From NCBI GenBank assembly GCA_030704615.1, contig CM060732.1, positions 57,412,001 to 57,476,000 of the forward strand: a stretch of DNA of 64,000 bases, read 5' to 3'. This DNA is from Takakia lepidozioides (lineage: Eukaryota; Plantae; Bryophyta). Below are positions 10,472-14,476 of this stretch, in pieces (the stretch's first letter is position 1; each line of letters begins with the position of its first letter). The notes beneath the pieces are model-generated. The model saw only the letters and a program-made list of their open reading frames with translations, made no database searches and was not told the origin of the DNA. The translations under genes and the position numbers were made by a program.

Positions 10472-13400
10472 TCATTCCGATTGATTTGTTTGCAAAAGTG
10501 TGGGAAGGGGTGAAGTACGTACGACCTGAGATAGGTTGGGCAACTTCTCAACCCATTCGCGTAGTTTGAACCATGCCGTGATCAGGTGATCATATCCAGC
10601 AGGGTCGTGCGGAAACTGGGAACATTCCCAGGCATCGACCAACCAGACGTTGTGTAGGGGATCGTGTCCGGTTTTGACGACGTTGCAATAGCCCATCTGC
10701 CGCTACAAACGTGAACTTGTCACTGTCGTGATCATAATCACGAATCAGGAGGGTGAGTGGGAAATGAAAATATTAGTGCACAGAGGAAGGTTGCGGATGG
10801 AATACCGGTCGACCGATGCAGGTTTCCTTCGGTGGCATGTACGTGGTCGATTCCTGGCAGAAGCGAATTGTGAGCATGCCCAGATCGGTTCTGCCGTCGT
10901 TATGTATGTCGTCGCAGAGATACAGATGTGACCAAGGCGTGTCTCCGACCGTGCCAATATGTACGACTAGACCAACTCCATCGAATTCACTGCATGACGT
11001 CTCAAATTCAGATGAAAGATGAAAGAAATGTGAAAATCAAAATAAAAGTAAATAACTCTAGTGGCTTACAGTTTCCCACTTGTTTGTCAAAAGTAGGCCC
11101 GCGCATCTCGGTGGCGTTGGTTGTCGGCACCGGAATGAAGTCCTGCCACCCCCACACATCACGTTTGAGCCTCGCGCACGTTAAGTCGGGATGGCATCGT
11201 CATTGGTCATTCGTAATGGGCTCACCTGAAGAGGGCCGTTTCGGTGGTCGAAAGGCGCCGCCATTTTCCCTCGTCGTTGGATTCCATGTGCACCATGTCC
11301 GGATCAGACGATGGAGTTGCATGGGCGCAAGATCGTGTATAAGGTAGATGCCGCCTTCTTCGATGTGCGGAGCCTGCACATGTTGCCACCCACGTGTCAC
11401 CTTTGTACACATGACGTTGGAACCACAAGTAAACCGTGGGAAGGTCGGCATGCGACAGACCTTATGGCTGGCAGAATAGGAGGTCACCATAGCCCAGCAC
11501 CATGTGGCGGATCGCCTCTTTCTGAAAAAATCGTTCGGTGACCGTATTAGCGATACTACGTTGCCGATCTTTATTTTGCGGAATCGGTCGACGCGCCTGG
11601 TGACCACCCCTGCCGCCTCTATCGCCTCCAAGATACCGTTGTCCATGACATCGCACTTAACTTCCTGCATCCATCCATCACCGCCGAGCCCCTCCTGTTA
11701 AAGGGGTTATGAGGGGCAGAATGGGAGGCTTTTGCAGGTACCCCTATTTTGAGAACGAGACCATCACCATGGCGTAGAGTCTTTGTTCATCACCCTCATG
11801 ACAGTAAGGTCTAGGAACCATGAAGGACCATGAGCCGTCCCGATCGAAAACCTGATATCGAAAAAATAAATAAAAGGGAACGTTCGGTCGAATTTACAGC
11901 GGCGTACCTCGCGGAGACACAAGTGGTTGTTGAGGGCCACTCGGTCGCTCGGAGTCAACCGATCGATGGCATGTGCGGCCCCCCTTGTGAACAACACGGC
12001 GCTCAAGCTTCCGTTTCCGTCCAGTTCGGCCACGCGGTCCCGGGAGATTCGTTCTAGACGGCTTCTCGCCGCCTCCACGACCTTCGTACGCCTGTTTATT
12101 GCTTCGAATGTCAGTCTCGACATTGACCCATACGTCTATGCCATGGAATTGCAGGGTATGGTAAGATGTCCATTCAACCTTTCTTTGAAACGTCGGTCCT
12201 TGATATGTTCCAGTTCCAGACATCTTGCCATTCCGTGTGTCCCATCCGGCAACCTGGCACATATACGGCTGTGAGTTACCAAAACGATCGTTAAAACAAT
12301 CATCCGTATCAATTGGGTTAGATTCAAGGTTGGCCCATACCTCTCTTGGTACATCGTCGGATATACCCTCTCGACGGCCGCCAAAACCGACCAGACGGGC
12401 CCTCCGCATTGCTTGACGCATCGTAAGGACAATGGATGCTAAGGCCCGGTAACTCCTCACCCCGACGCATAAAATAATAATAATGACAATTGTTAGGCTG
12501 AGAAATTACTTTTCAAAATAACGTAAAAACAAACTAGCAAATCAGCGTTGTCCTTGGAAATTTAAAAAAAAAACAAAAGTGGTATTGTATGTGCAACGTA
12601 CAAAAACCTAACCGTTCGTCCCACGGGACCCGTCGTGTACCGTTCATATGGATCGTCAGCCAACACCTATCACGCACCTTCACCCCGGACCCGGAGGTAA
12701 GGTAAGGTATTAGTATGCCGTTTTATTTATTTTGTATTTATATTTTTCCATATCAAACCCGTCCACGAGGCCAGGTCAGAATACCTACTTACTTGTAAAG
12801 GGTGGAGGGGTTCGTCGCAACTTCCGTTGTATTGTGCGCCTTGGACCTGTAAATTCCGACTCGGTCATTTCGGAGCGGTCTCTAATCGGTCTCTAAACAA
12901 ACAATGCAAAACAAAATGGAAAAAGGAAAAAAAAAAAAAACCCCGCTTACCCACAGTTTTTGTCCGCTGAAAATCTTCTTCTGTTCGATCAATGCGGTTA
13001 TAAAATAATCTGTTCGCACCGTCAAGCAGTACCTGTGGAATACTACCACACGTGTCACCGTCCAACTGTATCAACTTTTAGCGGTCAGCAGGTTTTGGGG
13101 AACCGATATATTACCATCCGGCTGTCACCTCCAGGTCGATTGTTTCACGGCCCATTTGCTTCATCCAGTGCCTGATCGCCGTGACACACACTATCATCGC
13201 ACGCATCGACGAGGCTCGTTTCTCAGTGATGAGCTTGATAGTCGAAGACTGCTCCTAGTACGTTTCTTTCACGAACCTGTCCCCCGGGGGGAAATTCTGT
13301 TATATTCCATTTCCATACGGAACGAGGCTTAAAATAGAATATGTACGTGCACCTTACCTGTTATTGAGTTGGTGAATCACTTTGGACAGCGTGAGAAGGC

Positions 13401-14476
13401 GGTTGGCGTTTACATGGGGAAAACTCCGTTCGTGCGACGCTAGTTTCCACACGATCAGTCGGTAATGGTTTACCAACCATCTGCCATGGATTCATAAACG
13501 TCAATGCCCCGTCGCATACATGTTGAATAAAAAATAAAAAATAAAAAGTGGTTGGATGAGATTTGGACTCAACTCAAACGGAACGGTGTCCGCTGTCTTG
13601 GCTATTAGTAATGCGTGAACATGTCGGATCTCGGCTTTGCTCCCGTCTGTCCGAGCGACTTCGTAGTTGGCAGAAGTTGTTGCGTCGAGTCGGAGTATAT
13701 CATCCGGCACGAACCCGGTCTGCGGGCACAGGGGTACAACTTTATGAGGGAAGACGAGGGAAGGGGGGAGGGGAAACCTCGTGGTCGTATTAACTCACCG
13801 GATTTTCCTGGTGCGGCCGTGTTGGGTAAAACTCCCTCATGCTGGGAAGTTTCGTAATTGTTCCTAGGGGGGATGGTACATGGATCTTCTCCAATGCTGT
13901 CTTTGTAGCCGTCACGACGTTGGTTTGAGATTTACCGCTGCATTCAGGAGCCGACGTTTTCCATTATATTTATAAAAATGTTATTATTATTATTTCCTTT
14001 ATTGAAGAAATGTTTTCACGGAAACCAATAGAGTATTCAGTGAACACTCGGGTGAGTGAAACAGTACCTGGGTCGGGGACGTTTGAACGCTGGCGGGTCA
14101 TTACGGCTTGTGGTCGCTTTTGAATTGTCGAGAATGGATGCCAATGTGATTCTCGCACCGCGGACACTTTGCAAGGATACCTTGATCGGCGTTTCGTTGG
14201 CAATCTTGAAGCCGGTCGTTTTGCATGCCATTCGGTGTTGCTGGACTCTCATAGAATTATTAGTTTCTCAATCCGACGGGATTGCAAAACAAGGGAAAGG
14301 AAAAAAGAAAAAAGAGACGGATTGGCCGATAGGACGTGATCGGTACCGGGGGAGGAAACAGGAATAACAACAATAAAACAAAATGACTTTGAATAACTTT
14401 GGCGGTACTTACCGATCGCCGAACGACGTTCGGTTTGCTCTGCGGGCTCTACATCGGAAAGGTCCACAATCTTCAT
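10472..14476 (-). pseudogene. BRCA2: Compact, diverged BRCA2-like gene (1 BRC repeat, FxxP motif, helical domain, OB1, tower/OB2, OB3), many short exons, at least 3 in-frame stops
   Basis: Spliced translation gives GFKIANETPIKVSLQSVRGARITL (BRC), FKRPR, WLVNHYRLIVWKLASHERSFP, LEVTAGW|YCL..IFSGQKLW|VQGA, IHMNGTRRVPWDERLGF, LRCVKQCGGPVWSVLAAVERVYPTMYQER, IEEGGIYLIHDLAP, EFDGVGLVVHIG and GYCNVVK..VWLVDAWE, colinear with plant BRCA2. Stops at ~13256-13258, 12439-12441 and 11200-11202. The start codon and two junctions are tentative. Confidence 0.85.

What the first reader, a model, noticed from the sequence alone, without database searches (positions are those of the whole stretch)
10472..14476. 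Hidden mini-BRCA2: one BRC repeat plus a complete DNA-binding domain
Seen: invisible in the ORF track but recoverable by splicing, with every BRCA2 landmark in order (BRC at ~14130-14216, FKRP, NHYRLIVWKLA, EVTAGWY, NGTRR..W..RLGF, GGPV, EFD..VVH.G) in only ~4 kb. Divergence is high but motifs are kept, implying long selection as a separate lineage before the few stops arose. Known: a single BRC plus DBD resembles minimal functional BRCA2s such as Ustilago Brh2. I also recall that the Physcomitrium BRCA2 lacks the canonical DBD (to be verified), which would make a DBD-bearing copy in a moss notable.
Basis: partly seen in the sequence, partly recalled or inferred. Interest (0 to 1): 0.88.

Follow-up and report, generated by a model that had tools for sequence, protein, structure and literature searches.

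The report
Near-intact plant-type BRCA2 gene relic
The window holds a compact, intron-rich BRCA2 gene with the full DNA-binding domain, disabled here by only two stop codons and one frameshift; if the genome is a moss, as other notes of this scan say, that matters, because moss BRCA2 is published as lacking this domain.

Summary
On the minus strand, from ATG 14476 to TGA 10368-10366, lies a 16-exon BRCA2 homologue of about 760 codons. Exon pieces hit Pfam BRCA-2_helical, OB1 (three collinear pieces) and OB3. My own profiles place all conserved blocks in order.

Fourteen of the 16 intron positions of liverwort and fern BRCA2 recur here with the same phase. Of the 28 columns conserved in at least 90% of 36 BRCA2 proteins, 27 keep the consensus residue.

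The reading frame is broken three times:
- TAG at 13257-13255
- TAG at 12441-12439
- one frameshift between 11322 and 11227

A third TAG, at 12138, lies in a conserved intron. Two stops in 753 codons fit roughly 2-3% neutral decay, so this is a recently inactivated gene and not an old relic.

The single BRC repeat is only weakly supported. It has an FKIA motif and passes a shuffle test, but it fails both BRC profiles.

No close relative was found in any collection searched. The organism was not identified here; other notes of this scan call it a moss. Whether the gene is a host gene or transposon cargo remains open. The scan noted this same stretch before, within a 19-kb island.

The parts
14413..14476 (-). 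Exon 1: ATG at 14476, 21 codons plus 1 base; donor G|GTAAGT
   Evidence: Read from the sequence. It is the first ATG of the open frame. The junction to exon 2 is not unique: 29 single-intron solutions exist.
14068..14245 (-). Exon 2: BRC-like motif (FKIA core at about 14213-14127), then FKRPRP. A phase-1 intron lies upstream and a phase-2 intron downstream.
   Evidence: No Pfam BRCA2-repeat hit. Own BRC profile E 18. Plant profile 4.0 bits, E 0.13, aligned to a plant BRC. Mean local alignment score against 64 BRC repeats is 27.7, against 18.1 +/- 1.7 for shuffles; 0 of 500 shuffles reach it. The intron after FKxPR has the same phase as in fern and Riccia.
13799..13937 (-). Exon 3: linker before the helical domain (..LPSMREFY..)
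   Evidence: Unique GT-AG solution on both sides. The phase-0 intron after it is as in fern and Riccia.
13574..13719 (-). Exon 4: first part of the helical domain; donor GA|GTTGAG
   Evidence: The phase-2 intron splits a Glu codon just before W-x-x-NHY, exactly as in fern.
13358..13480 (-). Exon 5: core of the helical domain (WLVNHYRLIVWKLA...)
   Evidence: Pfam BRCA-2_helical E 7.5e-12. Own profile 71.8 bits. 107 BRCA2 hits in 1.84 billion representatives.
13115..13276 (-). Exon 6: end of the helical domain and start of OB1. It carries in-frame TAG 13257-13255 (lesion 1).
   Evidence: Pfam OB1 profile 1-52. The intron before it (13357-13277, phase 2 in an Arg codon) is as in fern and Riccia. 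No splice path removes the TAG without deleting 14 or more conserved residues.
12951..13032 (-). Exon 7: OB1 (..KIFSGQKLW)
   Evidence: Pfam OB1 profile 53-82. Phase-2 (Trp codon) and phase-0 introns as in fern and Riccia.
12793..12846 (-). Exon 8: OB1 (VQGAQ..PLHPLQ)
   Evidence: Read. Plant profile E 0.08. Phase-0 introns on both sides as in fern and Riccia.
12602..12677 (-). Exon 9: end of OB1 (..NGTRRVPWDERLGF); donor TTT|GTACGT, phase 1
   Evidence: Pfam OB1 profile 96-122, 26.6 bits, above the cut-off. Fern has TTT|GTGAGT, phase 1, at the same place.
12341..12452 (-). Exon 10: start of OB2 (PLSLRCVKQCGGPV..YPTMYQE). It carries in-frame TAG 12441-12439 (lesion 2).
   Evidence: Plant profile E 6e-7. 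No single GT-AG intron joins LGF to PLSL in frame if the exon starts after the TAG. With the phase-1 acceptor at 12454-12453, the spacing equals that of fern. The alternative is a 10-11-base micro-exon.
12179..12253 (-). Exon 11a: OB2 leading into the tower (LPDGTHG..RFKE); donor AG|GTTGAA
   Evidence: ER|LPxG junction and phase 2 as in fern and Riccia.
12092..12178 (-). An 87-base intron that contains the TAG at 12138-12136, so that TAG is not a lesion
   Evidence: Same position and phase as the fern and Riccia intron; Riccia's donor there is also GTTG-type. Removing it restores the plant spacing.
11908..12091 (-). Exon 11b: tower-like helices (..RVALNNHLCLRE)
   Evidence: Alignment by eye to plant and human tower sequence. 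No Pfam Tower hit. Phase-0 intron after ..RE as in fern and Riccia.
11226..11694 (-). Exon 12: tower return and the rest of OB2 (..RRVDRFRKIKI.., ..IEEGGIYLIHDLAP..). One frameshift lies between 11322 and 11227 (lesion 3). Two plant introns are absent here.
   Evidence: Plant profile E 0.29 for the tower return. The conserved block is in frame 2, but donor CAG|GTGAGC (11225) and acceptor CAG|T (10990) need frame 1 to give the split Ser codon before EFD, as in fern.
10806..10989 (-). Exon 14 (no exon is numbered 13, because an extra exon tested there was rejected): start of OB3 (S)EFDGVGLVVHIG..
   Evidence: Pfam OB3 E 6.4e-5, 23.1 bits against a cut-off of 24. Own profile E 5.8e-5.
10526..10696 (-). 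Exon 15: OB3 (MGYCNVVK..NVWLVDAWE..)
   Evidence: Plant profile E 0.002. Phase-0 intron before it as in fern and Riccia.
10366..10434 (-).
   Evidence: Read. It matches the plant C-terminal ..ERLRERV... Phase-0 intron as in fern and Riccia.

Best explanation
This is a genuine nuclear BRCA2 homologue of land-plant type, reduced to a short N-terminus with one degenerate BRC-like RAD51-binding motif and a complete DNA-binding domain: helical domain, OB1, OB2 with a tower-like insert, and OB3.

While intact, the protein would have acted as canonical BRCA2 does. The BRC motif holds RAD51. The helical and OB folds bind DSS1 and single-stranded DNA. Together they load RAD51 at resected breaks. This function is inferred from family knowledge.

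What is shown here:
- The domain order and the exon-intron structure.
- Retention of nearly all invariant residues. This means the gene was under protein-level selection until recently.
- Three breaks in this assembly: two in-frame TAG codons and one frameshift. Translation would stop after about 225 residues, before any OB fold.

The copy is therefore most likely a young pseudogene. Whether it is the host's own ancestral BRCA2 locus, a duplicate of a working copy elsewhere, or cargo of a large mobile element is not settled.
For: - Pfam helical, OB1 and OB3 hits lie on separate, collinear exon pieces. My own 37-sequence and 6-plant profiles also place the blocks collinearly.
- 14 of 16 intron positions of Adiantum and Riccia BRCA2, counted from FKxPR to the stop, are matched with identical phase.
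- 27 of 28 columns conserved at 90% or more keep the consensus residue, and 47 of 52 at 75% or more. Bona fide orthologues score the same.
- Two in-frame stops occur in 753 codons, against 51 in 1474 codons in the other two frames. Simulation gives P(2 or fewer stops) of 0.53 at 3% divergence, 0.23 at 5% and 0.013 at 10%.
- No splice path avoids TAG 13257 while keeping the conserved block. No single intron fixes the other two junctions.
- Pooled identity is highest to fern and liverwort (34%). In a neighbour-joining tree the gene is sister to six land plants, with 57% bootstrap support.
Against: - There are no reads or RNA, so none of the three lesions is verified and no junction is confirmed.
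- Two of the three lesions could in principle be removed by 8-101-base mini-exons.
- The acceptor proposed for exon 10 has a purine-rich tract.
- The land-plant grouping has only moderate support, and the six land plants exclude this gene in 93% of replicates.
- No relative closer than about 62% identity over 42 residues was found anywhere, so selection could not be measured directly.
Confidence: 0.7

Rival explanations
1. The gene is alive. The two TAG codons and the frameshift would then be assembly or consensus errors, private mutations of the sequenced strain, or are bypassed by unusual mini-exons. The organism would make a functional one-BRC BRCA2 with a DNA-binding domain.
For: Conservation at invariant columns equals that of working orthologues. 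There are only three breaks. Mini-exon solutions exist for two junctions, and one reproduces the plant spacing exactly. CpG observed/expected is about 1.1-1.3, as expected for unmethylated genic DNA.
Against: TAG 13257 sits inside a conserved block and cannot be spliced out. A stop codon is not a homopolymer-type error. The neighbouring MCM9-like gene is truncated, so the neighbourhood is decaying.
Confidence: 0.15
2. The gene is cargo of a large mobile element or a captured or duplicated segment. It would sit together with a ParB-like ORF and an MCM9 N-terminal fragment, and may have been kept because a RAD51 loader favours gap repair of the element's donor site.
For: There is a sharp compositional edge at about 16,000 that cuts the MCM9-like gene inside its OB domain. 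An integrase-core ORF lies just beyond it. Other notes of this scan describe giant transposons with ParB-like cargo in this genome. No BRCA2-MCM9 synteny exists in Riccia or Adiantum.
Against: No terminal inverted or long terminal repeats and no repeated palindrome occur in 1-24,000. No transposase domain was found inside the island. The ParB and methylase identity of the 895-residue ORF is not supported by Pfam. Captured gene fragments are not normally full-length or under long protein-level selection.
Confidence: 0.2
3. The gene is foreign DNA, from a giant-virus insertion or transfer from a non-plant eukaryote.
For: The island is GC- and CpG-rich and unlike its surroundings. The gene falls outside the six land plants in 93% of bootstrap replicates. 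No close relative was found.
Against: It has 15 spliceosomal introns, 14 of them at liverwort and fern positions with the same phase. It carries plant-type signatures such as LGF-C/F, PLxxxC[IV]K and ER|LPxG. No BRCA2 DNA-binding-domain relative was found in IMG/VR viral contigs. The insect and dictyostelid BRCA2 genes examined have very few introns.
Confidence: 0.03
4. The genome is not a moss. This would then simply be a divergent or decaying copy of the ordinary BRCA2 of a plant lineage that keeps the DNA-binding domain, so nothing conflicts with the literature.
For: I could not identify the organism. All three protein-database searches, two metagenome scans and four exact look-ups of window ORFs were blank.
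Against: Independent follow-up notes on other parts of this genome call it a moss, though these are unchecked. Identity to liverwort and fern BRCA2 is only 34%. The single BRC and about 760 codons differ from the 1,287-1,699-residue multi-BRC proteins of fern and liverwort.
Confidence: 0.1

Closest known systems
Canonical land-plant BRCA2 (Adiantum nelumboides MCO5582656.1; Riccia fluitans KAL2619874.1; Arabidopsis BRCA2A/B type)
   Same: The domain order is the same: BRC, FKxPR, helical, OB1, OB2 with tower, OB3. Fourteen of 16 intron positions and phases are shared. Plant-type motifs are present. Pooled identity is highest to these proteins, at 34%.
   Different: It has about 760 codons against 1,287-1,699 residues in the fern and liverwort proteins. 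It has one degenerate BRC instead of several. Two introns are missing. It sits on a long branch, at distance 1.15-1.26 against 0.87 between fern and liverwort. The frame is broken three times.
Non-canonical moss BRCA2 (PpBRCA2, Pp6C10_10830; PMC12412785)
   Same: It belongs to the same family through the BRC motif. If the genome is a moss, it is also from the same kind of organism.
   Different: PpBRCA2 is 391 residues, disordered and described as intronless, with BRC repeats only and no DNA-binding domain. This locus is the opposite: intron-rich, with at most one BRC and a full DNA-binding domain.
Minimal BRCA2 proteins with one BRC plus a DNA-binding domain (Ustilago maydis Brh2; recalled from memory)
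   Same: The architecture is the same: a single BRC followed by a canonical DNA-binding domain.
   Different: There is no specific sequence or intron-structure affinity. This gene groups with land plants. Brh2 is functional, while this copy is broken.

Membership tests
BRCA2 with canonical DNA-binding domain | BRCA-2_helical domain (PF09169) | tested here: met
   E 7.5e-12, 45.7 bits against a cut-off of 25, profile 137-179/187 on exon 5. The earlier helices are aligned only weakly.
BRCA2 with canonical DNA-binding domain | OB1 (PF09103) | tested here: met
   Three collinear exon pieces cover profile 1-52, 53-82 and 96-122. One piece scores above the cut-off, 26.6 against 25.6.
BRCA2 with canonical DNA-binding domain | OB2 with tower insert (PF09121) | tested here: inconclusive
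   The OB2 start scores E 6e-7 against the plant profile. The tower return scores E 0.29. There is no Pfam Tower hit and no PDB sequence hit. Length, the ..ALNNH.. motif and three shared introns fit.
BRCA2 with canonical DNA-binding domain | OB3 (PF09104) | tested here: met
   E 6.4e-5, 23.1 bits, just under the cut-off of 24. The two OB3 exons score E 5.8e-5 and 6.6e-4 against my own profile, at collinear positions.
BRCA2 with canonical DNA-binding domain | At least one BRC repeat with an FxxA core (PF00634) | tested here: inconclusive
   No Pfam hit. Own BRC profile 1.5 bits, E 18, ranked 15th in the window. An FKIA motif is present. The shuffle test gives 0 of 500. A phase-1 intron lies upstream, as in fern BRC exons.
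BRCA2 with canonical DNA-binding domain | Uninterrupted reading frame (a working gene) | tested here: not met
   TAG 13257-13255, TAG 12441-12439 and a frameshift in 11322-11227. These were not verified with reads.
BRCA2 with canonical DNA-binding domain | Binding of RAD51/DMC1, DSS1 and single-stranded DNA | not testable with these tools
   No plant RAD51 sequence could be used in the complex tool. Bench assays are needed.
Land-plant BRCA2 lineage | Shared intron positions and phases | tested here: met
   14 of 16 are shared with Adiantum and Riccia. The insect and dictyostelid genes examined have 8 and 1 introns in total. How many positions are older than plants was not tested.
Land-plant BRCA2 lineage | Grouping with land-plant sequences in a tree | tested here: inconclusive
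   Neighbour-joining tree on 265 pooled exon columns: sister to six land plants in 57% of 200 bootstrap replicates, and never nested inside them as a moss orthologue should be.
Non-canonical (DBD-less) moss BRCA2 | Absence of the helical and OB domains; intronless; several BRC repeats | tested here: not met
   This locus has the full DNA-binding domain, 15 introns and at most one BRC. The definition comes from PMC12412785.

The most novel reading that the evidence does not exclude
Mosses did not simply lose the BRCA2 DNA-binding domain in their common ancestor. In this reading the ancestral intron-rich gene survived as a separate one-BRC, DNA-binding-domain gene alongside the intronless BRC-only BRCA2. 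It would have stayed under selection until about 2-3% sequence divergence ago in this lineage, so intact copies may still work in other strains or moss species.
Probability: 0.3. Interest if true: 0.8.

Novelty: new member of a known kind. Interest (0 to 1): 0.6.

Why it matters
A 2025 paper (PMC12412785) proposes two classes of BRCA2. It states that mosses, the plants with yeast-like gene targeting, lost the canonical DNA-binding domain in their common ancestor. That conclusion came from protein-database searches only.

A BRCA2 gene with the DNA-binding domain, selected until recently and now broken or unannotated, would change that history if it sits in a moss genome. The function would have been split between two genes, not lost. 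It would also give a concrete candidate to look for in other mosses, and a natural test of whether the domain is dispensable there.

If the genome is not a moss, or the locus is only a decaying duplicate, the finding is an ordinary pseudogene.

Tried and rejected
- **Protein-database searches:** three homologous-protein searches were all blank: the exon-12 ORF, the PLATZ ORF and the 895-residue ORF. Four exact look-ups of window ORFs were not on record or gave no organism.
- **Collection scans:** two metagenome scans and one viral scan with a DNA-binding-domain alignment found nothing.
- **Structure-database and Atlas searches:** PDB sequence searches of the OB2 and tower pieces gave nothing. 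ESM Atlas gave only weak leads under 0.8.
- **Readings I held first and then rejected:**
  - A 28-base pseudo-intron or frameshift after exon 5. It is replaced by the 81-base intron 13357-13277.
  - The TAG at 12138 as a lesion. It lies in a conserved 87-base intron.
  - A frameshift at the exon 9/10 junction. The fern phase shows an in-frame TAG instead.
  - An extra exon at 11142-11080. It does not fit the plant spacing or phase.
- **Mini-exon rescues** of two junctions remain possible but are less likely.
- **Element ends:** a search for terminal repeats and repeated palindromes in the island was negative.
- **Synteny:** BRCA2-MCM9 synteny in Riccia and Adiantum is absent.
- Exons were searched one by one, and for distances only per-exon alignment columns were pooled.
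- **Complex prediction:** Complex prediction was not used, because no usable plant RAD51 was available.
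Full report
**What is there**

Pfam was given each piece by reference. It reports BRCA-2_helical at 13357-13491 (E 7.5e-12). It reports BRCA-2_OB1 on three successive pieces that cover profile positions 1-52, 53-82 and 96-122. It reports BRCA-2_OB3 at 10776-11036 (E 6.4e-5).

A phmmer search of the helical exon against 1.84 billion representative proteins returned 107 BRCA2-type proteins and nothing else. The best hit had only 62% identity over 42 residues. A profile built in the sandbox from 37 of these DNA-binding domains, and a second from six plant sequences, place the window's pieces strictly collinearly from the helical domain to OB3.

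**Gene model**

I read the minus strand and enumerated all GT/GC-AG paths between conserved blocks. I then mapped the fern Adiantum nelumboides BRCA2 (P0012) and the liverwort Riccia fluitans BRCA2 (P0062) onto their own loci to get exact intron positions and phases.

The locus resolves into 16 exons from ATG 14476 to TGA 10368-10366, about 2,285 coding bases.

From the FKxPR motif to the stop, liverwort and fern share 16 introns. Fourteen of them are present here at the same place and with the same phase. Several even split the same residue:
- Glu before W-x-x-NHY
- Arg after ..QL-x-x
- Trp of ..DGW
- Phe|Cys of LGF-C
- Arg of ..ER|LP
- Ser before EFD

Two plant introns are absent: the one after ..TEE-x, and the one before the small exon that precedes EFD. 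The insect and dictyostelid BRCA2 genes I mapped have very few introns. The locus is thus a genomic, intron-bearing BRCA2 of land-plant architecture. It is not a retrocopy and not a virus-like gene.

**Is it intact?**

Three places break the frame.

1. TAG at 13257-13255 lies in the block that corresponds to plant RYEREVN-x-x-RSAIKKI, with no length to spare. Every splice path that avoids it deletes 14 or more conserved residues.
2. Between ..RLGF and PLSL.. no single intron keeps the frame. The fern and liverwort intron there is phase 1, with donor TTT|GT. The same donor is present here at 12601. With the phase-1 acceptor at 12454-12453, the spacing to PL equals that of the fern exactly, but the reading passes through TAG 12441-12439. 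A 10- or 11-base micro-exon would also restore the frame. I consider that less likely, though it is not excluded.
3. The conserved ..IEEGGIYLIHDLAP.. block is in one frame. The strong donor at 11225 and the acceptor at 10990 reproduce the plant split Ser codon before EFD only in another frame. So one frameshift lies between 11322 and 11227. Only contrived mini-exons avoid it.

A further TAG, at 12138-12136, which I first counted as a lesion, lies inside an 87-base intron. That intron has the position and phase of the liverwort and fern intron, and removing it restores the plant spacing.

**Evidence for recent selection**

Of the 28 alignment columns that are at least 90% conserved across 36 eukaryotic BRCA2 DNA-binding domains, this locus keeps the consensus residue at 27. 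At 75% conservation or more it keeps 47 of 52. Liverwort, fern, dictyostelid and vertebrate-type controls score the same.

The chosen frames hold 2 stops in 753 codons. The other two frames of the same exons hold 51 in 1,474. Random substitution of the exons yields about 2.5 new stops at 3% divergence and 8 at 10%. The gene therefore encoded a constrained protein until recently, with roughly 2-3% neutral divergence since then. That figure is a rough inference.

**The BRC repeat**

The stretch around 14213-14127 has an FxxA core (FKIA) followed by the alternating hydrophobic pattern of BRC repeats. It sits just before FKRP, as in plants. It is preceded by a phase-1 intron, like the fern BRC exons.

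Its mean local alignment score against 64 BRC repeats taken from the retrieved proteins is 27.7, against 18.1 +/- 1.7 for shuffles; no shuffle of 500 reached it.

Against this, Pfam's BRCA2-repeat model does not hit it. My own BRC profile gives 1.5 bits, E 18, which is no better than other pieces of the window. I call it a candidate degenerate BRC. No second one exists in the window.

**Affinities**

Pooled over the well-placed exon columns, identity is highest to fern and liverwort (34%), then about 32-30% to angiosperms and about 25-31% to non-plants.

A neighbour-joining tree from distances summed over 265 exon columns puts the locus as sister to the six land plants in 57% of 200 bootstrap replicates. 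The six land plants exclude it in 93% of replicates. This fits a fast-evolving streptophyte gene but does not prove it.

The joined spliced protein was deliberately never assembled or submitted to any search or fold. No maximum-likelihood tree or structure prediction was made for the same reason.

**Context**

From the window start to about 16,000 the DNA is GC-rich (47-59%) and not CpG-depleted (observed/expected 1.0-1.35). The rest of the window scores 0.1-0.7. The edge is sharp.

Head-to-head with the BRCA2 start lies an MCM9-like N-terminus. Its best PDB hit is the MCM9 N-terminal domain at E 0.13, and it has an MCM_OB hit at E 5.7e-5 covering profile 4-43/126. It stops at that edge, and no MCM ATPase motif occurs anywhere in the window. 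Just beyond the edge is an integrase-core ORF (E 6.9e-7).

Other notes of this scan read the island as part of a giant mobile element. I confirm the composition. I found no terminal repeats, no repeated palindrome and no transposase inside the island. Riccia and Adiantum show no BRCA2-MCM9 synteny. Host locus, dead duplicate and transposon cargo all remain possible, and genome-wide copy number would decide.

**Organism and literature**

I could not identify the organism. Every database route was blank. Follow-up notes on other parts of the same genome call it a moss; these are unchecked and are not evidence of mine.

PMC12412785 shows that BRCA2 of Physcomitrium, Ceratodon and Funaria lacks the canonical DNA-binding domain. 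It proposes that the domain was lost in the moss common ancestor. Its searches were PSI-BLAST and HHpred on annotated proteins, and it describes PpBRCA2 as intronless.

If this window is from a moss, an unannotated, intron-rich, recently selected BRCA2 with that domain would revise the history towards a split into two genes. If it is not from a moss, the locus is an ordinary decaying BRCA2 copy.

**Verdict**

This is a real BRCA2 family member of land-plant type with a compact architecture. It is most likely a young pseudogene in this assembly. The scan had noted this same stretch before, within the 19-kb island.

Noticed in passing
window 1-16000 versus 16001-64000: The left 16 kb is GC-rich (47-59%), with CpG observed/expected 1.0-1.35. 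The value falls sharply to 0.1-0.6 at about 16,000. The rest of the window scores 0.24-0.7, except a CpG-rich patch at 19,001-20,000.
   Followed up: partly
window 14785-15875 (+): An MCM9-like N-terminus lies head-to-head with the BRCA2-like start. Its best PDB hit is the MCM9 N-terminal domain 7w7p (E 0.13). It has an MCM_OB hit at E 5.7e-5 covering only profile 4-43/126. No MCM Walker A, Walker B or arginine-finger motif occurs anywhere in the window, so it looks truncated at the compositional edge.
   Followed up: partly
window 16733-17140 (+): An ORF piece with an integrase core domain (Pfam rva_4, E 6.9e-7, above the cut-off) lies in the CpG-poor stretch just right of the island edge. 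A transposable element probably abuts or truncates the island.
   Followed up: no
window 19148-19891 (-): A weak Ulp1/Peptidase_C48 match (E 0.016, below the cut-off) lies inside a 1-kb CpG-rich patch.
   Followed up: no
window 1125-3812 (-): An 895-residue uninterrupted ORF has no Pfam hit and no relative among 5.8 billion proteins. Only a weak Atlas lead (0.76) was found. The ParB and methylase reading made elsewhere in the scan was not supported by the tools used here.
   Followed up: partly
window 53874-55012: At least ten copies of the palindrome CAATTCAATTGAATTG are spread over about 1.1 kb. This resembles the motif-studded transposons described in other notes on this genome.
   Followed up: no
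window 32482-33297 (-): A 271-residue ORF has a strong zf-C17orf113 zinc-finger hit (E 5e-20), which is a transposase-derived type of domain.
   Followed up: no
window 22781-22852 (+): A tRNA gene (Rfam RF00005, 60 bits).
   Followed up: no
window 13573, 12178 and 12597 (minus strand); L002: This gene uses GTTG-type splice donors: GTTGAG at 13573 and GTTGAA at 12178. A GTTGCA candidate lies at 12597. Riccia has GTTGCA at the intron homologous to the one at 12178.
   Followed up: partly
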